A stretch of 64,000 nucleotides of DNA from the IMG/VR virus record IMGVR_UViG_3300043399_000297, positions 62,001 to 126,000 of that record; one strand, written 5' to 3'. The position numbers were made by a program, and so were the translations under genes. The notes under the pieces are model-generated. The model was not told the DNA's origin, did no database searches, and saw only the letters and a program-made list of their open reading frames with translations. Positions 1,703-37,177 of the stretch are shown here, piece by piece. How positions within the stretch are numbered: the first letter of the stretch is position 1; every line of letters begins with the position of its first letter.

Positions 1703-2647
1703 ATGGACGACATTATTGATATTGCAGACTTAGACGTAATATACCTAAGCTATGACGAACCTCAAAAAGAAGAATTCTGGCTCAAGATTAAGAATATGGT
1801 GCCTTGGGCTGTCAGAGTAGATGGTGTTAAGGGAAGTGACGCTGCACATAAAGCAGCAGGGGAAGCATCATCTACTGAGAGATTCATTCTCATTGACGGT
1901 GACAACTTGCCCGATGAGAACTTCTTTAATTTACAATTAGACTTTACCGATAAAGACCCTAACTACAAGTTAGCGCAGTATCGTTGGAGAGCAGTCAATG
2001 CTATCAACGGGCTACGTTATGGCAACGGCGGTATGTCGTCCTGGACAAAAACTTATGTTGCCAATATGAAGACCCACGAAAGTAGTGACGGTAGTGATGC
2101 CACGACGGTTGACTTTTGTATGGATTCTTCAGATAATCTATACTGGGCAATGCACGATTGCTACTCTACTACGTATCCAAACTACACTCCCTTCCAAGCG
2201 TGGAGAGCAGGATTCCGTGAAGGTGTCAAGATGGTGCTTGATCGGGGTGCAAGGCCCAGTATAGACGATTTCAAAGAGAGAGTTGCTGGCCGCAATTTAG
2301 ATAATCTTAAAGTTTGGTTTAATGTCGGCGCAGACGCAGAGAACGGCTACTGGGCCATATATGGCGCAAGGCTCGGAACGTATATGACTATGCTTACTGA
2401 CTGGGACTATTTAGAAGTAGCGGACTTTGATACATTTGTTAAATTGTGGGAAGACCATAGATATAATTATCCTGAACAAGAAATTGAACGTCTTGGCAGA
2501 GAATTAGATAATAAATTAGGTCTCCCCGTCTGCTTACTCAGCCCGGAACAATCAAAGTTCTTCAAGCATTTTTACAACGCTGACAAACACAATCAAGGAC
2601 CATTGGTCAAGGAGATGGATGTGATTCGCCGCCTAGAGGGATGGTGA
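1703..2647 (+). CDS. GT-A-fold glycosyltransferase-like protein
   Basis: DVIYLSYDE, RVDGVKGSDAAHKAA, LIDGD (DxD) and WRAGFREGVK; start moved to the ATG at 1703 after TAAATA. Confidence 0.6.
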   Translation: MDDIIDIADLDVIYLSYDEPQKEEFWLKIKNMVPWAVRVDGVKGSDAAHKAAGEASSTERFILIDGDNLPDENFFNLQLDFTDKDPNYKLAQYRWRAVNAINGLRYGNGGMSSWTKTYVANMKTHESSDGSDATTVDFCMDSSDNLYWAMHDCYSTTYPNYTPFQAWRAGFREGVKMVLDRGARPSIDDFKERVAGRNLDNLKVWFNVGADAENGYWAIYGARLGTYMTMLTDWDYLEVADFDTFVKLWEDHRYNYPEQEIERLGRELDNKLGLPVCLLSPEQSKFFKHFYNADKHNQGPLVKEMDVIRRLEGW

Positions 2648-10243: not shown

Positions 10244-11349
10244 ATGTTTTAAACACCCAAGGTATTCCCTATTTCAGTAGTAATGGATTTGAATTGCGCG
10301 GGAGTGCAATTATTCATAACAATTTAGCTGACTTTGATGACTCTCCTATTTATTATGTGGAATTCTTTTCCGGTGAGGATATGCATATTTTCGAAACAGT
10401 TACCCCTCCGCATATTCTTGATAGTATCAGAAAGCGAGAAGTTACACTAGTTATTAACAACTCGCACGAAGCGTTTCATCACATCGTAGATCCTTTGTAT
10501 AGAATTTTATGTGTAGAGTTGAATTTGCCGCCGGAACAAATTGTTCTGTTGAGTGAATCTGCAATCATCAACCAAGAGATTGCTACTATAGCAAAAAAAT
10601 ATAACTTGCCTAGGATGCAGTCTAAGTGGATTAGAATCTGCGAACACAATATTAGAATTTCTAATACTACCGTTATTGATACTCTTGAACTTAAAGAATA
10701 CCCGAAAAAATATCTTAATTTTAACAGAAGATGGAGACCACACAGACCTGTTTTTGTTGGATTGTTAAAACTAAATAATTTATTAGATCAGGGGTATGTG
10801 AGTCTAGCTCCCAGTGACGATAATAGAAATTGGGAAAATTTTATAGACATATTAGGTACTTATGATCCTCAATTCATCGGCAGAGAGCAGGAGATATTAA
10901 ATACGGAACCTTTGTATCTAGATACTAAAGACCTACATATTAACCAGGCTATATTAACTGATAGCACTGATTTTTATTACAGTAACACATATTTCAGTGT
11001 AGTCAGTGAGACTAACTTTTATAAAGACTTTGGTGAGGGAGTGTTTCTTAGCGAAAAGGTGTTTAAACCCATCAAAAAGATGCACCCATTCATATTACTA
11101 AATAGGCCGTTTTCTTTGTCTGCTTTACGAAGTTTAGGTTATAAAACGTTCGGTAATGTTATAGATGAAAGATATGACATTCAAGAAGATGATCAAACAA
11201 GAATACGAATGATATTAGAGGAAACTCGTAGATTGTGCAACTTAAATATTAACGAACTTGAACATTTCTTAAACGAATGCAAAATAATATGTAGGTACAA
11301 TTATGATCTGCTGCACAGCAAAAAAACATTTTATACTATGCTAATATAA
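10240..11349 (+). CDS. Glycosyltransferase-like protein (NR..HR / ET..SEK / GYKTF family)
   Basis: NFNRRWRPHR, FSVVSET, FLSEKVFKP, HPFI, LGYKTF, DERYD; paralogous to 11366, 15422 and 21187. Confidence 0.55.
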   Translation: MNVLNTQGIPYFSSNGFELRGSAIIHNNLADFDDSPIYYVEFFSGEDMHIFETVTPPHILDSIRKREVTLVINNSHEAFHHIVDPLYRILCVELNLPPEQIVLLSESAIINQEIATIAKKYNLPRMQSKWIRICEHNIRISNTTVIDTLELKEYPKKYLNFNRRWRPHRPVFVGLLKLNNLLDQGYVSLAPSDDNRNWENFIDILGTYDPQFIGREQEILNTEPLYLDTKDLHINQAILTDSTDFYYSNTYFSVVSETNFYKDFGEGVFLSEKVFKPIKKMHPFILLNRPFSLSALRSLGYKTFGNVIDERYDIQEDDQTRIRMILEETRRLCNLNINELEHFLNECKIICRYNYDLLHSKKTFYTMLI

Positions 11350-11365
11350 AATAAAGGATTAGCTT

Positions 11366-13447
11366 ATGACTCACACCCTATACTATAATCAGCAGTTCGG
11401 GTTACCAGATCATACCAAAATTTTGTCAGATGTTTACTCTCAGTCTGCAAGCAGAGTAGTATTGTTATGCGAGCAAGAATGGGAAATTACAGGTTTAACT
11501 AAAGAATTTGTCGAGGAGTTGAATAAGAAGAACGTTCAATTAAAAATTGTCCACGGGTCCTTTAGAAATCAATACTATGAAGATTTCTATGCTGAGCTGG
11601 GGGTTCCTATCAATGATGTTGACTTTTGGGGTACCCATTGGATTAATGGAACATATTATGCCATCGATAATATATACAGACCTGAATTCTATGTTCCGAA
11701 TCCTAGCAAATTTAAGTATAAATTTATTAGCCTCAATAATCGAAGTCACCTTCATAGATGCGCCTTCATCGATGAAATGGCAGGACAAAATCAACTAGAT
11801 AAAGGCATTGTTACCTGGGTAAAACATTTGAATGAGAATAGTGATTATCCGTACAAATATTTTGACAATAGACAGGTGCTATTAGATGATGGTTTTGTAA
11901 CCAAACTTAATTCTTTTTTACTTCCCACTGAGTGGCACGAATCAGCATTGCACGTTGTAGTAGAAAGCACGACAATGGCTACCTTCATTACTGAAAAAAC
12001 TGCAATTCCTCTTTTACTCAAGAAGCCTTTCCTGGTGTTTGGTGCTATGGGATTCAACCAATGCTTACAGAAATTAGGCTTTGAATTGTATGATAATGTA
12101 TTTGATTATTCATTCGATTCTATTTCGGATACACACGAAAGAGCAAAATGTTTTGTTAATAACTTGCGCGTTCTAGAAAACTATAGTCCTCGCGAGATAT
12201 ATTCTGTTTTAATAGACAAAACAATTCGCAATTACAATCGTGCATTAGAAATTTTACTAGACAATAGCTTTATACCTGAATCAGTTATGGATTTCTATAA
12301 ATCCGGTATTAACAATGCAATATCTAGTAGAATAGGATCGTACTTAAATGTTAATATAAAAAAACTGAAATTTTATTCGGTTTGGGAAAACAATCCAGAC
12401 TATCTAACAGAAGTTAAAAATCAGGACACGAGAGAAGTTATTGTAGATAATACTGTTGAAACTAGGTACACCTCGCTGCAACATTCATCAGTGGGAGTTC
12501 AAAATCTAGCAACAGTATGCCATTCAGAAAATGTCCCTTTGACTTTATTGTCTGCTGGATATAGATTTAACAAAGAAATGCTTGATGATACTATTGCAGA
12601 ACGAATTAAAATTGTTGATCATAGTTGCTATTGGATAGCTATATATTTGGATATGTTAACTAATCAAACACACTATCAAGAAAACTTGAATCGCGGCTAC
12701 GACATTTTTGACAAAGATGTTGGGTTCGCTCAAGACATCGACTATCTTTATATCACTCTCAACAACATCGCTAAGTATCATCGCTGTGTTATGATGGATT
12801 TTCTTAGTAAATATGAACTAATTGATCAGGGAGCCATAGTATGGAGAGGTAAAAATAGGGGATATGATAATGTAAGAGAATCATTAGGTAACACTGATGA
12901 GAGTGGATATGATTTTAAATATTGGACTCCTACTAGGATGTTTCTGGACATACCCAATGATAACACTAGTACTGTAAATCAAAATCTAATACCTAATGAA
13001 TTCAAAAATTCCTTTATGCAGTTGGTTGCTGAGTCTGAACATAGGATGTTTTTTATTTCAGAGAAGACAGTGTTACCTATTATAGCTAACAAGCCCTTCT
13101 TAGTGGTGAGCGACAAAAATTTTCATAAAAATTTAAAAGAATTAGGTTTTGAGTTGTTTGATGAGTTGTTTGATTATTCTTTCGATAATATCGACGATGT
13201 TAAAGACAGAATTGAGAAACTTGTATTGAATGTGCATAGATATCGTAATCATAATAAAGAAGAATTGAGGGAACTTACTAATTTAGTAAAGCCCAAGTTA
13301 ATTCATAATAGAGAATGCGCAAAAACATACCTTAAAGAGATTATTGATATGTTCACTCCTTATATGTATAAACTAGCCTTTAGTAATATACATTCACGAT
13401 TGGAATTGCTAGCGAGGTGCGAAAAAAATGTTAATAGATTTTCCTAA
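11366..13447 (+). CDS. Glycosyltransferase-like protein with two tandem copies of the same domain
   Basis: The motif set LNN..HR, E(S)..FI(T/S)EKT..P...KPFL, LGFEL(Y/F)D..FDYSFD occurs twice. Confidence 0.55.
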   Translation: MTHTLYYNQQFGLPDHTKILSDVYSQSASRVVLLCEQEWEITGLTKEFVEELNKKNVQLKIVHGSFRNQYYEDFYAELGVPINDVDFWGTHWINGTYYAIDNIYRPEFYVPNPSKFKYKFISLNNRSHLHRCAFIDEMAGQNQLDKGIVTWVKHLNENSDYPYKYFDNRQVLLDDGFVTKLNSFLLPTEWHESALHVVVESTTMATFITEKTAIPLLLKKPFLVFGAMGFNQCLQKLGFELYDNVFDYSFDSISDTHERAKCFVNNLRVLENYSPREIYSVLIDKTIRNYNRALEILLDNSFIPESVMDFYKSGINNAISSRIGSYLNVNIKKLKFYSVWENNPDYLTEVKNQDTREVIVDNTVETRYTSLQHSSVGVQNLATVCHSENVPLTLLSAGYRFNKEMLDDTIAERIKIVDHSCYWIAIYLDMLTNQTHYQENLNRGYDIFDKDVGFAQDIDYLYITLNNIAKYHRCVMMDFLSKYELIDQGAIVWRGKNRGYDNVRESLGNTDESGYDFKYWTPTRMFLDIPNDNTSTVNQNLIPNEFKNSFMQLVAESEHRMFFISEKTVLPIIANKPFLVVSDKNFHKNLKELGFELFDELFDYSFDNIDDVKDRIEKLVLNVHRYRNHNKEELRELTNLVKPKLIHNRECAKTYLKEIIDMFTPYMYKLAFSNIHSRLELLARCEKNVNRFS

Positions 13448-24478: not shown

Positions 24479-24566
24479 AAAAATTGTCAACAAGATTAAA
24501 CGAGAGATTACATACCGCAAGCGTGTCAAAGAACTACGCAAAAGAGATCCGTTCATTTACAAATGA
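24462..24566 (+). CDS. 34-aa basic peptide MFKFIKKIVNKIKREITYRKRVKELRKRDPFIYK (not in the ORF track)
   Basis: GGAG RBS upstream; the stop overlaps the carbamoyltransferase start (ATGA); fills the intergenic gap exactly. Confidence 0.75.
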   Translation: MFKFIKKIVNKIKREITYRKRVKELRKRDPFIYK

Positions 24567-26047
24567 GTTATCTAGGCATTAGCTGCGGCTTTCACGATGC
24601 TGCTGTCAGTGTAGTTGACAGTGTTGGCAATATCACCTTCGCCGGACATAGCGAACGTTATAGTAAGAAAAAACACGATGAAAACTTATCTGTTGATCTA
24701 GTCAAAGATGCACTAACGCATTCATATGGCTCTATGGAACTACACTATTATGAGAGACCATACATTAAGGCTATCAGGCAATGGCAAGCTGGACAAGATA
24801 TCGGGCCATTGAACGTTAAAGATATAATTGGCTCAGATGTATTAGATACTCTAAAAATGTATGATAGTAAGATTCATACACACAATCATCATCTTTGTCA
24901 CGCCGCAGCCGGCTTTCAAACAAGCCCATTCAATGATGCTACTGTAGTTGTCATTGATGCGATAGGGGAATTAGATACTATTAGTATTTGGCACGCCACT
25001 TATAATAAGAAAGGTAGAGCGAAGTATAAGAAGCTTTGGGGAAAGAAATATCCTAATTCAATAGGACTAATGTATTCAGCTATGACACAGAGAGTAGGTC
25101 TTAGACCATTAGACGAAGAATACATATTGATGGGTATGGCAGCATATGGCAAACCTAAATATTTTGATTTATTAAATGATACCTTTTTGTCTAATCCTGC
25201 GTATATTGATTTTAGGCAGAACTTGCATACAGGAGTAGATCAAAGTTTCTTGTCCGGTGCAGATGATATGGATATTGCTAGTTCTGCGCAAGCGTTGGCA
25301 GAAGTATTGATTCGAATTGTATTGTTAAAGGCGATGCATCTGGGAAGAAGTAGTAACCTAGTATATAGCGGAGGAGTAGCACTCAACTGTGCAGCCAATA
25401 GATATCTAGGAAGCTATTTCAAAAATATGTGGATTATGCCTAACCCAGGTGATGCAGGCAATAGTCTTGGTGCAGCAGCATTAGGGTACGGTAAGAAATT
25501 AAATTGGACTAATGCATTCTTGGGTTATGAAATCAAAGGCGATTATCCGGTTGACAATCTCATAAAAGAGTTGCATAGTAATAAGATCGTAGGAGTAGCT
25601 AGTGGTAGAGCAGAGTTCGGTCCAAGAGCATTGGGTAATCGTAGTCTGTTAGCAGACCCACGCGGCCCTAATATTAAGGATAAGGTTAATGAGATTAAGC
25701 GAAGACAAAAGTTCAGACCATTTGCGCCGATCGTTTTGGAGGAGTTGGTTACTGATTACTTTGATATGCCTACTGGTTGGACTGACTCTAGGTATATGCA
25801 AGTCGTCGCTATTTGTAGGCATCCTGGTTTATTTCCTGCTATCGTTCACGCTGACGGGACTAGTCGTGTTCAGACTGTTCCTAAAGATGAATCAGGAATC
25901 AGAAAGCTTTTAGAAGTTTGGTACGAACAGACCGGCTGCCCTATGCTTCTTAATACATCACTGAATATTCGCGGTGAACCCATGGTCAACGATAGAAATG
26001 ATGCTGACCGCTTTGAAAAACTCTATGGAGTAAAAGTATATTCATAA
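24563..26047 (+). CDS. O-carbamoyltransferase (NodU/CmcH/TobZ family)
   Basis: HDAA, ERYS, HHLCHA, MGMAAYG, GGVALN, PGDAG, EFGPRALGNRS, FRPFAP, NTSLN. Confidence 0.93.
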   Translation: MSYLGISCGFHDAAVSVVDSVGNITFAGHSERYSKKKHDENLSVDLVKDALTHSYGSMELHYYERPYIKAIRQWQAGQDIGPLNVKDIIGSDVLDTLKMYDSKIHTHNHHLCHAAAGFQTSPFNDATVVVIDAIGELDTISIWHATYNKKGRAKYKKLWGKKYPNSIGLMYSAMTQRVGLRPLDEEYILMGMAAYGKPKYFDLLNDTFLSNPAYIDFRQNLHTGVDQSFLSGADDMDIASSAQALAEVLIRIVLLKAMHLGRSSNLVYSGGVALNCAANRYLGSYFKNMWIMPNPGDAGNSLGAAALGYGKKLNWTNAFLGYEIKGDYPVDNLIKELHSNKIVGVASGRAEFGPRALGNRSLLADPRGPNIKDKVNEIKRRQKFRPFAPIVLEELVTDYFDMPTGWTDSRYMQVVAICRHPGLFPAIVHADGTSRVQTVPKDESGIRKLLEVWYEQTGCPMLLNTSLNIRGEPMVNDRNDADRFEKLYGVKVYS

Positions 26048-31058: not shown

Positions 31059-31087
31059 TTGACATTTATATCACATTGTGATATATA
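31059..31087 (+). promoter_or_regulatory. sigma70 promoter of the tmRNA with a palindromic spacer
   Basis: TTGACA-17-TATATA, containing TATATCACA-T-TGTGATATA. Confidence 0.75.
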
Positions 31088-31093
31088 AAGTTA

Positions 31094-31446
31094 TCAGTTG
31101 TTGATACAATCTGATGTTTGTGCAGGACCCGGGGGCGGTACCCGGCAGGTCCACCATCAACCTTGTCACTGTAGCTAGTGAAAGCTGACTAGTGAAAAAG
31201 GATAAACCTGTCGAAGGAGGATAAGCTCTCCGGGGGACGGGGGAATGGCCCGCTCGACATGCGGGAGGACAAGGTTGTTGATGGGCCTGAAACAGGATCG
31301 ACTGCAAGGCGGAGGTGAGAGTAGACTGATTGGTTGGTCGCATATAGACCAAAATAAACAACTGCAAATGATAATGACTTTGCATTTGAATTGGCTCTAG
31401 CAGCCTGATTCATTGGGTATGGCTCCACCCCGAAACAGAACGGGCC
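31094..31446 (+). ncRNA. ssrA: Circularly permuted two-piece tmRNA (alphaproteobacterial type)
   Basis: Acceptor piece ends GGACCCGGG-GGCGGTA-CCCGGCAGGTCCACCA (31156). Coding piece starts GGGCCTG (31283), giving a 7-bp acceptor stem with a G3.U70 pair. Tag ORF 31364-31408 reads ANDNDFAFELALAA*. Outer ends are approximate. Confidence 0.93.
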
Positions 31447-31470
31447 TCTTTCCATACAGATAAATACAGT

Positions 31471-33999
31471 ATGGACATTTCAGAACTCGCCAATTTCAAT
31501 TTAAGTGATGCAGTATCTTTTCACGAGGAACTAAACCCACAGCTTTGGGAAGACCACAAATTAGACAGAGAAGTTCGTGATCAGTTATTGTTGATTGCAG
31601 AAGACTTTGTAGAATATCTTGGTATTGGTACACTTAAAGTAAAAGATGTTACTATCAGTGGTAGTAACGCTGCATATTCATATACTCCCCACAGTGATTT
31701 AGATTTGCATATCATAGTAGATTTTAATGATCTACCTAACGATCCAGTGTACCAAGAACTATTCACTGCTAAAAAAACAATATATAATGAAATGCACGAT
31801 ATAACGGTTCATAGTGTTCCTGTAGAATTATATGTGCAAGATATTAATCAACCTGTGCAGTCATTGGGTGAATATAGTATTGTTCACAACAAGTGGATTC
31901 GTATTCCTAAAAAGCGTAGAGCTAACTTTGACGAAGTTGCTACTAAAGCCAAATATGATAAACTAGCTGACTTGATTGAACTTACATTGAAGTCAAAAGA
32001 CTATAATAAAGTGAAAAATACACTTGATTTGCTCAAGCGTTATCGTAAAGCTGGGTTGGAAAAAGAAGGTGAGTTTGGTCCTGAAAATCTCGCATACAAG
32101 GCTCTTAGGAAGCAAGGTGCTGTAAAAGATTTGTTTGATCTTAAAGCTAGGCTTCACGCTGAACGGTTGAGTATTGAAGAAGATTCAAAATTACTTGACA
32201 AGCCGGAAATGACTATAGCACAGTTAGCAGAGAAGCACGGTGTATCTCGTATGGAAATTGCAACGCAGTTGGACAAAGGCATTAAGGTTGAACTTGAACA
32301 CACTAGTCATAAAAATGTAGCTCGTGAGATTGCATTAGACCATATTGCTGAGGATCCAAAATACTATGATAAATTATCTAAGGCTGAGTTGGAAGAAGAG
32401 ATTGTAGATGAAACCGCAGAAGAAAATCAAATAATTAGCTTGATAGCTAAACACGCGGCTGATAATATCGTAGACATAATGCAAGTTAAAGAAAATGCAT
32501 TTTTATCATTTATACAAGCAGGTATGACTCCCAAACACAATCTTACAGTGTTTGGTGTCAAAATCAAAGATTTAGGTATTCCTAAAGTCAAGGATCCCAC
32601 ATTAGCAAAATTGTTAAAAACTATGGAAATCAAGGTTAAAACTTCTAAAAATTGGGAAAATGATGAGGGTATAAAAACGCACGGTAGTTATTATCCCGGA
32701 GAAAATTATATTGAACTTTATTTTCCGGCTCACGAGTTCACTGCTAAAAAAAGAGATTCATCATTGCAAGTAGAAATAGCAGACACACTTGCTCACGAAA
32801 TACAACACGCATTGGATGACTTTAAAAGTAAAGGAAACGCATTTAAAGATTTAGCATCTTATTCAGGTGGTAAAGATTATGAATCATACTTAAAACTTCC
32901 ATATGAAGTAAATGCTAGATTCCAGCAAGCAACTATGGATATAGCAAAGTATATAGCTACACCGAAAAAAGATGGATCAAGAACTACACAAAAAGATTTG
33001 CCCGAATTGATTAGATATGCGTTTGAGAAAAATCAATTAAACAATATATATAGAAAGAACCAAGCAGAATATAAGCGATTACTCACTAGAGCATATAAAT
33101 TTTTTCAAGCAGAATTAAATGCTCCCAAGAAAGCAACGCCTCAGAATATAGTAAGTAGGGCAGTCAATTGGATATTAGGAAAGCCTACTACACAGGTTAA
33201 GGAAGCATCAGGATATATCCCCAGAAAAAAAGAAAATAACTATTTAGGCTGGGAATTCACAAAACCAAAACCTGATTATTGGATGATGCAAGAAGCGGTT
33301 GAAGAATATTACAAGAAAGATGGTAAATGGTTTCCCCACAGAACACACGGAATTCATCAATTGGTCACTAGACAGGAATTACGTGAATCTATGCAAGATG
33401 AAGTCAAAGAATTCTGGAACCAAATGATTCGTTTAGACGGTCGTAAAGAAGTAAAATTAAAGCCCGGTAGTTCAGTTAGTGTCATACAATGTTGGTCTCA
33501 TCCTTATGATTCTATATTTGAGTTGAGGGGCAACTTAAACCCTAAAAAAATAGCAGATGTATATTATGAGGATGGAGGATCAATCAGTTATATACAATTT
33601 GAAGACGGATCAACATTCCCGGACAAATCATTTCTAGACCGAGGACAAGGCGGAGAATTGGATGGTATCATAACTACTTTCTTTCCGTCTAAGCAAGCAG
33701 CCGAACATATGTTGACTGCTTTACGGTTAGTTGTTCCTGCTGGATGGAAATTAAGCACCGCTAACTTAAACGAATCTTCGTTGAATGAAGCCTCGGGATA
33801 TATTCCAAGTAAAAAAGAAAAGAACGACCCTCGCTTCAAGACTGCCCTCACTGTAGATGTAAAGCCAGACAGCATCAAAAAGAATGCTAATGCGTTCAAC
33901 TGGAAAACATCGCGGGCCGGCATTCCTCCCCAGGCTAGATCAGATGGCAAACTAGCAGAAGATTTGATGAAAGAGTTTAAAAACTTTTTGGGTAAGTAA
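31471..33999 (+). CDS. Modular protein: Pol-beta-type nucleotidyltransferase, small helical domain, HExxH zincin-like domain and unknown modules
   Basis: ISGSNAAYSYTPHSDLDLH..VELYVQD; GIKVELEHT..IALDHIAEDPKYYDKL; LAHEIQHALD..EVNARF; duplicated EASGYIP. Confidence 0.7.
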   Translation: MDISELANFNLSDAVSFHEELNPQLWEDHKLDREVRDQLLLIAEDFVEYLGIGTLKVKDVTISGSNAAYSYTPHSDLDLHIIVDFNDLPNDPVYQELFTAKKTIYNEMHDITVHSVPVELYVQDINQPVQSLGEYSIVHNKWIRIPKKRRANFDEVATKAKYDKLADLIELTLKSKDYNKVKNTLDLLKRYRKAGLEKEGEFGPENLAYKALRKQGAVKDLFDLKARLHAERLSIEEDSKLLDKPEMTIAQLAEKHGVSRMEIATQLDKGIKVELEHTSHKNVAREIALDHIAEDPKYYDKLSKAELEEEIVDETAEENQIISLIAKHAADNIVDIMQVKENAFLSFIQAGMTPKHNLTVFGVKIKDLGIPKVKDPTLAKLLKTMEIKVKTSKNWENDEGIKTHGSYYPGENYIELYFPAHEFTAKKRDSSLQVEIADTLAHEIQHALDDFKSKGNAFKDLASYSGGKDYESYLKLPYEVNARFQQATMDIAKYIATPKKDGSRTTQKDLPELIRYAFEKNQLNNIYRKNQAEYKRLLTRAYKFFQAELNAPKKATPQNIVSRAVNWILGKPTTQVKEASGYIPRKKENNYLGWEFTKPKPDYWMMQEAVEEYYKKDGKWFPHRTHGIHQLVTRQELRESMQDEVKEFWNQMIRLDGRKEVKLKPGSSVSVIQCWSHPYDSIFELRGNLNPKKIADVYYEDGGSISYIQFEDGSTFPDKSFLDRGQGGELDGIITTFFPSKQAAEHMLTALRLVVPAGWKLSTANLNESSLNEASGYIPSKKEKNDPRFKTALTVDVKPDSIKKNANAFNWKTSRAGIPPQARSDGKLAEDLMKEFKNFLGK

Positions 34000-34660: not shown

Positions 34661-35761
34661 ATGTCTCAAATGTCTGATACCCTCACTGTTACTTCGATCC
34701 AGGCGCGCAAGGCTATTCTTGCTGCTTTCAAGGCAAAGCGTCCTGTCTTCCTCTGGGGCCCTCCGGGCATCGGTAAGTCGGAAGTCGTTCAGGAAATTAC
34801 TGAGGAACTCGGTGGTTATATGGTCGATCTGCGTATGGCGCAGATGGAACCCACTGATATTCGTGGTATCCCCTACTACAACAAGGACCTCGGCAAGATG
34901 GATTGGGCCGAGCCCGTCGATCTTCCCAGCGCAGAACTTGCTGCTGAATACCCCATCGTTGTTCTCTTCCTTGACGAAATGAACTCTGCTCCCCCGGCTG
35001 TTCAGGCTGCTGGTTATCAGCTTATTCTGAACCGTCGTGTTGGTAAGTATAAGCTGCCCGATAATGTTGTTATCGTTGCTGCTGGTAACCGTGACAGCGA
35101 CAAGGGCGTTACTTATCGTATGCCGATGCCGCTTGCTAATCGTTTCGTTCACCTTGAAATGCGTCCCGACTTCAATGCTTGGCAGCAGTGGGCTGTTCAC
35201 AAGGCTGTTCACAAGGACATTGTTGGTTATCTCTCGTTCGCTAAGCAGGATATGTATGACTTTGATGCAAAGTCTTCTTCTCGTGCTTTTGCTACCCCGC
35301 GTTCGTGGGTGTTCGTGAGCGACCTGCTCGTTGACGAGGACAATGTTGACAACGATACACTGTTCAATCTTGTTGCAGGTTCTGTCGGTGACGGTCTTGC
35401 TACTAAGTTTATGGCACATCGTCGTGTTGCTGGTCAGATGCCTGAGCCGATCGACATTCTCGACGGTAAGGTAAAGGACCTCAAGGTCAAGGAAATCTCT
35501 GCGATGTACTCGCTCACGATTTCTATGTGCTACGAACTCAAGGACGCACTTGATAACAAGCGTGTTGACAACAAGCAGTTCCACGTGATGGCTGACAATT
35601 TCTTCGAATACATCATGAAGAACTTCGAAACTGAACTGGTTGTGATGGGTGCGAAGATTGCGCTCAAGACTTATCGTCTGCCGATTGAGCCCTCGCAGCT
35701 TTCTAATTTTGACGAGTTCCACAAGAAGTACAGTAAGTATATCGTGGAAGCTGGCAACTAA
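34661..35761 (+). CDS. MoxR-type AAA+ ATPase
   Basis: GPPGIGKS, LFLDEMN, AAGN, LANRF, TPRSW. Confidence 0.9.
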   Translation: MSQMSDTLTVTSIQARKAILAAFKAKRPVFLWGPPGIGKSEVVQEITEELGGYMVDLRMAQMEPTDIRGIPYYNKDLGKMDWAEPVDLPSAELAAEYPIVVLFLDEMNSAPPAVQAAGYQLILNRRVGKYKLPDNVVIVAAGNRDSDKGVTYRMPMPLANRFVHLEMRPDFNAWQQWAVHKAVHKDIVGYLSFAKQDMYDFDAKSSSRAFATPRSWVFVSDLLVDEDNVDNDTLFNLVAGSVGDGLATKFMAHRRVAGQMPEPIDILDGKVKDLKVKEISAMYSLTISMCYELKDALDNKRVDNKQFHVMADNFFEYIMKNFETELVVMGAKIALKTYRLPIEPSQLSNFDEFHKKYSKYIVEAGN

Positions 35762-35866: not shown

Positions 35867-37177
35867 ATGAGTCAAGTTATTCCCGGTACTGCGACTAAGC
35901 CCAAGAAGGGTAAGCGCACTCGCAGCCAAAAGTTTGAAAATCTGATCGGTCCGACTGATCCTAAGATTGACCACGAAGCTCGTGAACGTCTGATCACTGC
36001 TCGTATTGGTCTCCTTCTTCGTCATAGCTTTTTCGGCAACCTCGCTACTCGTCTCCAGCTTGTAAATGCTGACGAGTGGTGCTCCACTGCTGCTACTGAC
36101 GGTCTTCGTTTTTATTACAACAGTCGTTTTATCAAGATGCTTAAGACTAAGGAGGTTGAATTCCTCGTTGGTCACGAAGTGCTTCACGTAGTCTACGATC
36201 ACCTTGGTCGTCGTGACAGTCGTGATCCTGAAATCTGGAACATCGCTAACGACTATGCTGTTAACGCTGACCTTAAGCGTCACAAGGTCGGTGAAATGAT
36301 CACTACTGTTCCTGCTCTCTTTGAGCCTAAGTATGATGGTAAGGCTTCTGAGGAAATCTATGATGACCTTATGAAGAATGTCAAGTATATTGACATTGAT
36401 GAACTCCTTGACAAGATGCTTGACGATCACCTTGAAGACGAGGGTCAGGGTATGGGTGATGAAGACGGTGATGAAAATGGTCAGAAGGGTAATGGCAAGC
36501 GTCCTAAGATGAGTCCTGAGGAGCGTGAGCGCGCCCGTCAGGAGATGAAGCAGGCTATCATCAATGCTGCACAGAGTGCCGAAGCTGGTTCTATCCCGGC
36601 TGGCGTTCAGCGTATGATCAAGCAGCTTACTGATCCTGTTATGCCCTGGCGTGAACTGATCCAGACGAACCTTACTTCGTCTATCAAGAGCGATTACACT
36701 TGGATGCGTCCTTCTCGTCGTTCTTGGCATATGGATGCTGTTATGCCCGGTATGAACCCGGGTGAAGAAATCGATGTTGATATCTATATCGATATGTCGG
36801 GTTCTATCTCTAACAAGCAGGGTATGGCATTTCTTTCGGAAGTCGCCGGTATGATGGAAGCGTTCGATGGTTATTCGCTTCGTGTCACTTGCTTTGATAC
36901 TCGCTGCTATAACACACAGGAGTATACTAGCGAGAATATGGAGAATATCGAGGAGTATGAGCTTGCAGGTGGCGGCGGTACTGACTTCGACTGCATCTTT
37001 GACGACCTTAAGGAAGCAGGACGTGTCCCGGTTCGCTTGATCGTATTCACTGACGGTTATCCTTGCGGTAGCTGGGGTGATGAGGATTACTGTGATACGA
37101 CTTGGATCATTCACGGTGATCCCAATCCGAACCCGCCCTTCGGTACGTATGCTATCTATGACGACCACAGAAAGTAA
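35867..37177 (+). CDS. Metallopeptidase-like plus VWA domain protein (DUF2201-type), partner of MoxR
   Basis: TAATDG, HEVLH, WNIANDYAVN, DMSGS (MIDAS), GGGGTDF, FTDG. Confidence 0.88.
   Translation: MSQVIPGTATKPKKGKRTRSQKFENLIGPTDPKIDHEARERLITARIGLLLRHSFFGNLATRLQLVNADEWCSTAATDGLRFYYNSRFIKMLKTKEVEFLVGHEVLHVVYDHLGRRDSRDPEIWNIANDYAVNADLKRHKVGEMITTVPALFEPKYDGKASEEIYDDLMKNVKYIDIDELLDKMLDDHLEDEGQGMGDEDGDENGQKGNGKRPKMSPEERERARQEMKQAIINAAQSAEAGSIPAGVQRMIKQLTDPVMPWRELIQTNLTSSIKSDYTWMRPSRRSWHMDAVMPGMNPGEEIDVDIYIDMSGSISNKQGMAFLSEVAGMMEAFDGYSLRVTCFDTRCYNTQEYTSENMENIEEYELAGGGGTDFDCIFDDLKEAGRVPVRLIVFTDGYPCGSWGDEDYCDTTWIIHGDPNPNPPFGTYAIYDDHRK

What the first reader, a model, noticed from the sequence alone, without database searches (positions are those of the whole stretch)
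31157..31282. Long, GC-rich, multi-stem intervening segment inside the tmRNA: possible passenger ncRNA
Seen: 126 nt between the CCA and the mature 5' end, much more GC-rich than the genome. It is closed by CCATCAA/TTGATGG and CCTTGTC/GACAAGG, and contains stems CACT/AGTG, TAGCT/AGCTG, TGTCGA/TCGACA, GGAG/CTCC and CGGG/CCCG, plus a mutually exclusive CCCGC/GCGGG hairpin. Known: this segment is excised during maturation and is often short. Inference: host RNase P and 3' processing would release a stable structured RNA in equal amounts to tmRNA. It could be a decoy, antitoxin-like RNA, switch or ribozyme. I could not match it to a known ribozyme core.
Basis: partly seen in the sequence, partly recalled or inferred. 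Interest (0 to 1): 0.7.

Follow-up and report, generated by a model that had tools for sequence, protein, structure and literature searches.

The report
Orphan structured spacer in phage tmRNA
The 126-base stretch is the cut-out spacer of a phage's two-piece tmRNA gene: a conserved 10-pair stem carrying a unique, strongly folded 100-base insert found in no relative; related phages hold unrelated RNAs, tiny protein genes or almost nothing at this site, so it looks like a cargo slot, but a function for this insert is unproven.

Summary
The window comes from a 244-kb freshwater phage record and holds an intact alpha-type permuted tmRNA gene. The CCA end is at 31156 and the coding piece starts at 31283. 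The 126 nt between them have 52% GC against 38% for the genome and fold into a four-way junction (-48.2 kcal/mol, z -4.5).

The segment has two layers:
- **Basal helix.** A 10-bp helix followed by a UGAU leader. This is a class feature: 88% of 74 related segments have it, against 3% of shuffles, with heavy covariation.
- **Apical insert.** About 100 nt with no homologue by Smith-Waterman alignment, covariance model, Rfam or ARAGORN, and a single copy in the genome.

The closest tmRNA relatives carry 9 nt, unrelated 121- or 127-nt RNAs, or a 295-nt segment with an 88-aa ORF. Sampled bacterial genes never exceed 83 nt; 22 of 82 viral ones reach 100 nt or more.

Other inserts at this site are real passengers: micro-ORFs under purifying selection, a nested permuted tRNA-like unit, and one insert more conserved than its tmRNA. 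So the "passenger" idea fits the site, but nothing shows function or stability for this insert. No known ribozyme or riboswitch matches.

The parts
31059..31087 (+). Sigma-70-type promoter of the tmRNA gene: TTGACA (31059-31064), 17-nt spacer, TATATA (31082-31087)
   Evidence: Read. TTGACA and the TATA(A/T)A box are kept in related phage loci while the spacer between them differs. The consensus scan did not list it because the last base of the -10 box is not T. Function is inferred.
31093..31156 (+). Acceptor piece of the two-piece tmRNA: 5' strand of the long helix, T arm (31125-31146), acceptor 3' strand 31146-31152, ACCA 31153-31156
   Evidence: Rfam alignments; ARAGORN. It is 100% identical over 64 nt to L134 and 92% identical to L002, L061 and L126.
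31157..31282 (+). Intervening sequence (IVS), 126 nt, absent from mature tmRNA by definition of the gene form
   Evidence: Lies between the CCA and G1. Appears as an insertion of about 95 nt relative to the Rfam consensus.
31158..31167 (+). Basal helix, 5' strand (CAACCUUGUC)
   Evidence: Pairs with 31268-31277 at probability 0.93-1.0. A helix of median 11 bp is present at this position in 88% of 74 related IVSs against 3% of shuffles, with 4-6 pair types per position.
31174..31193 (+). Hairpin A (6 bp, 8-nt loop).
   Evidence: Pair probabilities 0.79-0.85; the repeat is read from the sequence.
31207..31241 (+). Hairpin B: outer 6 bp (CCUGUC/GACGGG), internal loops, inner 5 bp (GGAGG/UCUCC) with a 6-nt loop
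   Evidence: Pair probabilities 0.98-0.99. This is the only part that aligns to the first hairpin of the c-di-GMP-I-GGC model, at 17.5 bits.
31249..31265 (+). Hairpin C (CCCGC/GCGGG, 7-nt loop UCGACAU), next to the basal helix
   Evidence: Pair probabilities 0.98-0.99. The loop does not fit the T-loop consensus, and ARAGORN finds no tRNA-like unit even in permuted or intron mode.
31268..31277 (+). Basal helix, 3' strand (GACAAGGUUG)
   Evidence: covariation across the class.
31278..31282 (+). 5' leader UUGAU immediately before the RNase P site; its last four bases UGAU can pair with ACCA at 3 of 4 positions
   Evidence: TGAT ends 68 of 74 related IVSs; precursor fold. Cleavage by RNase P is inferred from established tRNA and tmRNA biology.
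31283..31449 (+). Coding piece of the tmRNA: acceptor 5' strand GGGCCUG with G3:U70, the pseudoknot region, and the tag reading frame 31364-31408 (ANDNDFAFELALAA, then stop)
   Evidence: sequence.

Best explanation
The segment is the intervening sequence of a phage-borne, alpha-type, circularly permuted tmRNA gene. It has two layers.

1. **Basal module.** This is a roughly 10-bp helix that starts one base after the CCA and ends five bases before G1, followed by a UGAU leader. It is common to this class of genes. It probably holds the two halves of the tRNA-like domain together in the precursor and presents the cleavage sites. RNase P cuts at 31282/31283. An endonuclease followed by 3' trimming frees the CCA at 31156. 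The processing enzymes would be the host's, because the 244 kb held encode neither SmpB nor RNase III.

2. **Apical insert.** This is about 100 nt placed in the apical loop of that helix, folding into three hairpins. It is specific to this lineage and is one of many unrelated, interchangeable inserts at this site. tmRNA function does not need it, because near-identical tmRNA genes have a 9-nt segment.

The site behaves as a permissive, highly transcribed slot whose contents turn over by insertion, deletion or cassette exchange between the conserved tmRNA halves.

What is shown: the anatomy, the class-wide basal helix, the hypervariability and the orphan status. What is inferred: the processing route, the release of a 126-nt by-product in one copy per tmRNA, and whether that by-product persists. 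I consider it most likely that this insert is a tolerated or at most accessory structured RNA. It is neither a ribozyme nor a required part of tmRNA maturation.
For: **Gene identity and boundaries:**

**Basal helix as a class feature**
- Median 11 bp; at least 7 bp in 88% of 74 unique IVSs against 3% of shuffles.
- 4-6 pair types per helix position.
- TGAT ending in 68 of 74.
- The modal 29-30-nt IVS is just this hairpin.

**Hypervariability**
- Window against L002: the tmRNA halves align well and the IVS does not, apart from compensatory changes in the basal helix.
- Genes sharing the same acceptor-piece sequence have IVSs of 9, 121, 126, 127 and 295 nt.
- L061 (9 nt) against L131 (127 nt): flanks are 90-92% identical (95% against L126), the acceptor piece 100% and the coding piece 98.8%.
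- Window against L134: the acceptor piece is 100% identical and the IVS is unrelated.

**Length contrast:** viral median 67 nt with 22 of 82 at 100 nt or more; bacterial median 28 nt, maximum 83, none of 115 at 100 nt or more; Mann-Whitney p = 5e-14.

**Orphan status**
- Single copy in the genome.
- No significant local alignment to 75 other IVSs.
- The covariance model finds nothing in 1.43 Mb of 163 related loci.
- No Rfam family reaches its threshold.

**Other points**
- The precursor fold keeps the T arm, acceptor stem and basal helix stacked.
- The record holds no SmpB or RNase III gene.
Against: - The insert interior has 55% GC in a 38% GC genome and is somewhat more stable than shuffles (z about -2.1 to -2.4). 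Neutral filler should drift toward the genome's composition. This hints at selection for structure or at recent import.
- Other inserts at the same site are clearly functional or constrained, so "tolerated by-product" may understate this one.
- No RNA data exist for this phage, so the processing route and the fate of the excised piece are untested.
The metagenome scan covered only one acceptor-stem type and lengths of 111-141 nt. Homologues could have been missed.
Confidence: 0.7

Rival explanations
1. Functional passenger ncRNA. The insert is a selected structured RNA expressed by piggy-backing on the strong tmRNA promoter. Host tRNA-processing enzymes release it, and the basal helix clamps its two ends and protects them. 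It would act in trans as a protein decoy, a sponge or a ligand-binding RNA.
For: - Interior GC is 0.55 against 0.38 for the genome, and folding is stronger than shuffles.
- Non-coding inserts at this site generally have GC of 0.45 or more, while ORF-bearing ones have 0.26-0.39.
- The 132-nt insert of the L169 family is 95.5-98.5% identical among loci whose coding pieces are 78-85% identical and whose flanks align at 71-79%.
- Genuine cargo is present elsewhere: micro-ORFs, including a DUF6356 member with 8 synonymous and 0 non-synonymous differences, and a permuted tRNA-like unit.
- Literature precedents: a tRNA-Ala gene inside a permuted tmRNA IVS (PMC11915505), and a glutamine riboswitch attached to a phage two-piece tmRNA gene (PMC9004378).
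Against: - No homologue of this insert was found, so there is no conservation or covariation evidence.
- No complementarity longer than 12 nt to the phage genome, which is the chance level.
- No match to any Rfam family at its threshold.
- No expression data.
- Near-identical tmRNA genes function, presumably, with a 9-nt segment.
Confidence: 0.22
2. Processing or folding modulator. The long, stable insert slows or gates maturation of the phage tmRNA. It could do so by blocking 3' exonucleases, or by making the quasi-continuous helix of about 20 bp (acceptor stem plus basal helix) an RNase III-type substrate. This would time tmRNA activity during infection.
For: - In the precursor fold the acceptor stem, the ACCA/UGAU pairing and the basal helix stack into one long helix.
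- The basal helix and the UGAU leader are strongly conserved in the class.
Against: - Those conserved features are present in the minimal 29-30-nt segments too, so they do not explain the 100-nt interior.
- The interiors are unrelated among relatives.
- The phage record encodes no RNase III.
Confidence: 0.05
3. Novel self-cleaving ribozyme or ligand-sensing switch that frees one of the tmRNA ends.
For: - A multi-stem junction with a weak resemblance of hairpin B to the first hairpin of the c-di-GMP-I-GGC aptamer (17.5 bits, E 0.036 in a 126-nt search).
- Mutually exclusive pairings exist.
Against: - The alignment deletes 36 consensus positions, namely the whole second hairpin, and the score is far below the gathering score of 59.
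- No ribozyme family appears even at E up to 10.
- The alternative fold is 5.1 kcal/mol worse, with probability below 0.01.
- Relatives mature, presumably, without any such element.
- The ends coincide with ordinary RNase P and CCA sites.
Confidence: 0.02
4. Remnant or copy of a mobile repeat element (of the MITE or palindromic-unit type) that inserted into the tmRNA gene.
For: - The site shows clean presence/absence polymorphism between close relatives.
- The ends are inverted repeats.
- A permuted tmRNA gene whose IVS holds a repetitive element has been reported (PMC11915505).
Against: - The insert is single-copy in the 244-kb genome and absent from 163 related loci.
- The inverted ends are the class-wide basal helix, which is also present in minimal segments without any insert.
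Confidence: 0.03

Closest known systems
Intervening sequence of circularly permuted (two-piece) tmRNA genes of Alphaproteobacteria and their phages (Keiler, Shapiro & Williams 2000; Sharkady & Williams 2004, both recalled and cited through PMC3978253; PMC11915505; Rfam RF01849, RF04321)
   Same: Same position between the CCA and the mature 5' end. The gene is otherwise a full-length, intact alpha-type permuted tmRNA. It shares the basal hairpin and the UGAU leader with the class.
   Different: It is about four times the bacterial median and longer than all 115 sampled bacterial segments. It carries a unique 100-nt three-hairpin insert with no relatives.
Intervening sequences of bacterial 23S/16S rRNA genes: extended stem-loops, sporadically present, excised by RNase III without religation, some carrying ORFs (own knowledge)
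   Same: A sporadic, hypervariable expansion of a helix tip in a stable-RNA gene. It is removed without rejoining. The base of the helix is conserved and the tip is free. Some members carry ORFs.
   Different: Here the break already exists in the gene form. The boundaries are a tRNA-type 5' end and a CCA end, so RNase P and 3' trimming are expected. Involvement of RNase III is only a possibility.
Passengers reported in or beside permuted tmRNA genes: an intact tRNA-Ala gene in one intervening sequence and a repetitive element in another (PMC11915505); a glutamine riboswitch in the 3' part of the ssrA gene of phage Melnitz and Pelagibacter phage Mosig (PMC9004378)
   Same: They show that extra functional RNAs can ride on a two-piece tmRNA transcript. 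Related loci here add micro-ORFs and a permuted tRNA-like unit.
   Different: The window's insert is not a tRNA, not a repeat and not a known riboswitch.
Spacer-derived regulatory RNAs released by tRNA processing, such as the 3' external transcribed spacer of the E. coli glyW-cysT-leuZ transcript, which sponges small RNAs (own knowledge)
   Same: A by-product of RNase P or RNase E processing of a tRNA-type precursor, made in one copy per mature RNA. It could act in trans.
   Different: No target complementarity was found in the phage genome. The host is unknown and no expression data exist.
c-di-GMP-I-GGC riboswitch aptamer (RF03167)
   Same: The AAAGG..AAACC...GGGAC-like first hairpin aligns.
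   Different: 17.5 bits against a gathering score of 59. The second hairpin (36 consensus positions) is missing and a 20-nt hairpin replaces the tetraloop.

Membership tests
Permuted tmRNA gene, intervening sequence | Lies between the encoded CCA of the acceptor piece and G1 of the coding piece, in a gene that passes the family models | tested here: met
   RF04321 93.5 bits (gathering score 47) and RF01849 83.2 bits (gathering score 50), both full length; ARAGORN permuted tmRNA; boundaries at 31156/31157 and 31282/31283.
Permuted tmRNA gene, intervening sequence | Class-typical basal hairpin starting 0-1 nt after the CCA, and a UGAU leader before G1 | tested here: met
   A 10-bp helix offset by 1 nt and 5 nt, ending in TGAT. 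The class shows this in 88% of cases, and the TGAT ending in 68 of 74.
Permuted tmRNA gene, intervening sequence | Absent from the mature two-piece RNA | not testable with these tools
   The RNA runs found hold only conserved tmRNA parts of relatives, not this segment.
Known self-cleaving ribozymes in Rfam (hammerhead, twister, pistol, hatchet, HDV-like and others) | Match to a family covariance model | tested here: not met
   No such family at E up to 10 in a search restricted to the segment.
c-di-GMP-I-GGC riboswitch (RF03167) | Score at or above the gathering score, and the two-hairpin aptamer architecture | tested here: not met
   17.5 bits against 59; 36 consensus positions of the second hairpin are deleted.
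tRNA or tRNA-like passenger (normal or permuted) | Cloverleaf with D- and T-loop signatures detectable by ARAGORN or the Rfam tRNA model | tested here: not met
   No tRNA in the window. None in the doubled segment even with introns allowed and lowered thresholds, whereas L145, L153 and L158 are detected by the same test.
Micro-ORF cargo (as in related intervening sequences) | An ORF of at least 20 aa contained in the segment, preceded by a ribosome-binding site | tested here: not met
   No such ORF in the window's segment. The only ATG frame (31245-31400) runs into the mature tmRNA.
Dispersed repeat or mobile element | More than one copy in the genome, or copies at other sites | tested here: not met
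   Single copy in 244 kb; none in 163 related loci.
Conserved structured ncRNA family | Homologues with covarying base pairs in the interior stems | tested here: inconclusive
   No homologue was found in the viral scan (13 loci with the same acceptor stem), the metagenome scan (26 loci) or the bacterial scan. The scans need exact anchors and were capped, so absence is not proven.

The most novel reading that the evidence does not exclude
The apical loop of the intervening hairpin of phage-borne permuted tmRNA genes is a general piggy-back expression slot. Anything placed there is transcribed from the strong tmRNA promoter and cut out by host tRNA-processing enzymes at no cost to tmRNA. Phages use the slot for micro-proteins, tRNA-like units and structured RNAs, and swap the contents by recombination between the conserved tmRNA halves. 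On this reading the window's 100-nt GC-rich junction is a new, functional, end-clamped small RNA of this kind, for example a decoy for a host RNA-binding protein or a defence factor.
Probability: 0.22. Interest if true: 0.7.

Novelty: new variant of a known kind. Interest (0 to 1): 0.5.

Why it matters
On its own this segment is an orphan spacer. Its context is the more useful result.

In aquatic phages the cut-out part of two-piece tmRNA genes is far longer and more varied than in the sampled bacteria. It holds real small genes and RNA modules behind a conserved stem.

If these are true passengers, the tmRNA gene is a natural platform for co-expressing small RNAs and micro-proteins, with release built in by host RNase P and 3' processing. 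That is relevant to four things:
- phage accessory-gene discovery;
- annotation, because these micro-ORFs and RNAs sit inside an "RNA gene" and will be skipped;
- tmRNA precursor processing, through the conserved helix and the UGAU leader;
- design of RNA expression cassettes.

Tried and rejected
- **Wrong first pattern.** My first viral-contig pattern had one N too many and found nothing. The corrected pattern was used.
- **Phage reference collection.** BLAST of the tmRNA region against the phage reference collection found no match.
- **Expression evidence.** The DNA runs that hold the locus look like the source sample. The RNA-labelled runs hold only 5-8% of the words, and these lie on the conserved tmRNA parts of relatives. 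There is therefore no evidence on transcription or stability.
- **Apparent shared motif.** The window's insert and the L169 family both contain GAAAGCTGA flanked by CAC...GTG. Against shuffles this was not significant (p about 0.1), and the consensus folds differ.
- **Interior folding z-scores.** These do not separate coding from non-coding inserts, so I did not use them to classify.
- **L169 family.** It has only one-sided changes and no compensatory pairs. Whether its contigs are phage or bacterial stays open: the neighbours are a PstS-like protein, a desaturase and Bax1-I.
- **L002 against L126.** The similarity is limited to the basal helix and one 9-mer.
- **Papers not held.** The Keiler 2000 and Sharkady & Williams 2004 papers were not in the library. 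Statements about them rest on citing papers and on my own knowledge.

Full report
**1. What is at the coordinates**

The window is bases 62001-126000 of a 244-kb IMG/VR virus record from a freshwater metagenome. Its GC is about 0.37. ORFs in the region checked (24-38 kb) lie mainly on the + strand.

ARAGORN finds one permuted tmRNA at 31064-31499 with the tag ANDNDFAFELALAA. Rfam finds tmRNA_permuted (93.5 bits) and alpha_tmRNA (83.2 bits), both over the whole model.

From the sequence:
- the T arm and acceptor 3' strand end with ACCA at 31153-31156;
- the mature 5' end GGGCCUG starts at 31283 and forms a 7-bp acceptor stem with G3:U70.

In the Rfam alignments it appears as an insertion of about 95 nt relative to the consensus.

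**2.

- GC is 0.52, against 0.38 for the genome and 0.48-0.50 for the tmRNA.
- The fold is a four-way junction. It has a 10-bp closing helix (segment positions 2-11 with 112-121, probability about 1) and three hairpins at 18-37, 51-85 and 93-109.
- The MFE is -48.2 kcal/mol, z -4.5.
- Without the closing helix the interior is only modestly more stable than dinucleotide shuffles (z -2.1 to -2.4).
A balanced switch is not indicated.

**3. Known families**

A search restricted to the segment, with E up to 10, returns no ribozyme. It returns only a 17.5-bit match to the c-di-GMP-I-GGC aptamer, whose gathering score is 59. That match aligns one hairpin and deletes the 36 positions of the other.

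ARAGORN finds no tRNA-like unit, even on a doubled copy with introns allowed. There is no contained ORF of at least 20 aa.

The segment is single-copy in the genome. Its longest complementarity to the rest of the genome is 12 nt, which is the chance level.

**4. Relatives**

The downstream 842-aa protein (DUF5661) leads to syntenic phage loci at 79% protein identity. These carry the same tmRNA gene. In the alignment the two tmRNA halves are conserved and the IVS is not. The exception is its closing helix, which is kept through compensatory changes.

Viral contigs sharing the same acceptor-piece sequence carry very different segments:

| Loci | IVS |
|---|---|
| L061, L132, L103, L133 | 9 nt |
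| L002 group | 121 nt |
| L126 group | 127 nt |
| L134 | 295 nt, with an 88-aa ORF |
| window | 126 nt |

The sequences of these segments are unrelated to one another.

Two comparisons make the point:
- L061 (9 nt) against L131 (127 nt). Flanks are 90-92% identical (95% against L126), the acceptor pieces identical and the coding pieces 98.8% identical. This is a clean presence/absence polymorphism.
- Window against L134. The acceptor pieces are 100% identical over 64 nt, the flanks are essentially unalignable and the segments are unrelated.

**5. Two layers**

Across 74 unique IVSs of at least 45 nt:
- a helix of median 11 bp starts 0-1 nt after the CCA and ends 4-5 nt before G1;
- it is at least 7 bp in 88% of cases, against 3% in shuffles;
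- there are 4-6 pair types at each position;
- 68 of 74 end in TGAT.

The most common IVS, 29-30 nt, is just this hairpin. Longer IVSs are insertions in its apical loop.

In the precursor fold the acceptor stem, a partial ACCA/UGAU pairing and the basal helix stack into one long helix. The basal module is therefore a conserved precursor feature, and the 100-nt interior is the variable part.

**6. Long inserts are a viral trait in this sample**

With the same T-arm anchor, 115 unique alphaproteobacterial segments have a median of 28 nt and a maximum of 83 nt. Among 82 unique viral-contig segments the median is 67 nt and 22 are 100 nt or longer (Mann-Whitney p = 5e-14). The literature records rare long bacterial cases (PMC11915505).

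**7. What other inserts are**

A metagenome scan covered the same acceptor stem and lengths of 111-141 nt. Together with the viral set it shows three kinds of content.

*(a) Micro-ORFs with a ribosome-binding site right after the CCA*
- L031 against L066: 8 synonymous and 0 non-synonymous differences, and a Pfam DUF6356 match at E 5e-12.
- L057 against L067: 9 synonymous and 6 non-synonymous.
- L152 against L156: 8 synonymous and 11 mostly conservative non-synonymous differences.

*(b) tRNA-like units*
- L145 and L153 carry a T arm and acceptor 3' strand, then a UUCG hairpin, then an acceptor 5' strand and a D arm.
- This is a permuted tRNA-like gene nested in a permuted tmRNA gene. ARAGORN calls it after re-permutation.

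*(c) GC-rich non-coding inserts*
- The L169 family sits in a beta-type tmRNA and has 118 nt more than the model.
- Its insert is 95.5-98.5% identical among loci whose coding pieces are 78-85% identical and whose flanks align at 71-79%.

None of the long inserts in 30 loci matches an Rfam family.

**8. Is the window's insert one of a family?**

No evidence says so.
- Smith-Waterman alignment against 75 other IVSs gives nothing beyond chance.
- A covariance model of its fold finds only itself in 1.43 Mb of 163 related loci.

No covariation test of hairpins A-C is therefore possible. RNA-labelled runs hold only the conserved tmRNA parts of relatives.

**9. Mechanism**

*Shown:* an intact tmRNA gene behind a conserved TTGACA-17-TATATA promoter. 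The IVS has class-typical ends.

*Inferred from established tRNA and tmRNA processing:* RNase P cuts after 31282. An endonuclease and 3' trimming expose the CCA at 31156. The 126-nt piece is released once per tmRNA. Its two ends are paired in the basal helix with only a 5-nt 3' tail, which should slow exonucleases.

The enzymes would be the host's, because the 244 kb held contain no SmpB or RNase III gene. The record is estimated to be 71% complete.

Whether the piece persists or acts is unknown.

**10. Verdict**

The "passenger ncRNA" reading is plausible for the site but not demonstrated for this insert. The insert is unconserved, dispensable for tmRNA in close relatives, and matches nothing known.

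The composition and stability of the interior, and the clear passengers in neighbouring lineages, keep a functional reading alive at roughly one in five.

The specific item is a new variant of a known kind. The class-level pattern, a cargo slot in phage tmRNA genes, is the part that deserves follow-up.

Noticed in passing
L031:1680-1868 (-), L066, L057:4844-4966, L067, L152:459-554, L156, L148, L151, L163, L070, L111:3116-3340 (-), L134:5727-5990 (-): Many intervening sequences of related permuted tmRNA genes contain small ORFs (21-88 aa, several with a hydrophobic helix). The ribosome-binding site comes right after the tmRNA CCA, and the stop codon often lies in the TGAT leader. L031 against L066 shows 8 synonymous and 0 non-synonymous changes and matches Pfam DUF6356 (E 5e-12). 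Gene callers would skip these genes because they sit inside an RNA gene.
   Followed up: partly
L145, L161, L167 and L153, L154, L159 (119-nt intervening sequence of a permuted tmRNA): The segment holds a T arm and acceptor 3' strand, then a UUCG hairpin, then an acceptor 5' strand, a D arm and an anticodon-stem strand. This is a circularly permuted tRNA-like unit nested in a circularly permuted tmRNA gene. ARAGORN calls a tRNA (CAT anticodon, with the 'intron' spanning the junction) only after re-permutation.
   Followed up: partly
L158 (114-nt intervening sequence): Cloverleaf-like insert whose last hairpin is a canonical T arm (GAAGG TTCGAGT CCTTC) next to the basal helix. ARAGORN gives a weak tRNA-like call only at a lowered threshold.
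   Followed up: partly
L169, L150/L155, L144/L164, L168 (beta-type permuted tmRNA, 132-nt intervening sequence): The insert is 95.5-98.5% identical among loci whose tmRNA coding pieces are 78-85% identical and whose flanks align at 71-79%. It is therefore either strongly constrained or recently spread. No compensatory changes are seen among the four variants. Whether the contigs are phage or bacterial is unresolved.
   Followed up: partly
L061, L132, L103, L133 against L126, L127, L131: The intervening sequence is 9 nt in one group and 127 nt in the other. For the pairs compared (L061 with L126 and L131) the tmRNA is near-identical and the flanks are 90-95% identical. This is a natural with/without pair, suitable for testing what an insert does.
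   Followed up: yes
window 31278-31282 and 31153-31156; 68 of 74 related loci: The leader before the mature 5' end is almost always UGAU. It can pair with the ACCA end at 3 of 4 positions (a C-A mismatch at -2/74), so the acceptor stem and the basal helix form a nearly continuous helix of about 20 bp in the precursor.
   Followed up: partly
It may be a slippage duplication.
   Followed up: no
L146:595-1038: A GOLLD RNA (RF02032, 194.8 bits) lies on the same metagenomic contig as a permuted tmRNA with a 129-nt intervening sequence.
   Followed up: no
L078:10940-11149 (-): A manA RNA motif (RF01745, 60.1 bits) lies immediately downstream of the permuted tmRNA gene (11152-11591, - strand).
   Followed up: no
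L134:1713-1789 and 2222-2296 (-): The phage contig with the closest acceptor piece carries two tRNA genes with a CUA anticodon (amber suppressors). This hints at stop-codon recoding in that phage.
   Followed up: no
window 24563-26047, 31471-33999, 34661-35761, 35867-37177: Neighbouring genes: a carbamoyltransferase; an 842-aa protein with DUF5661 directly downstream of the tmRNA and syntenic in relatives; and a MoxR-type AAA ATPase followed by a DUF2201 metallopeptidase/VWA-like protein.
   Followed up: no
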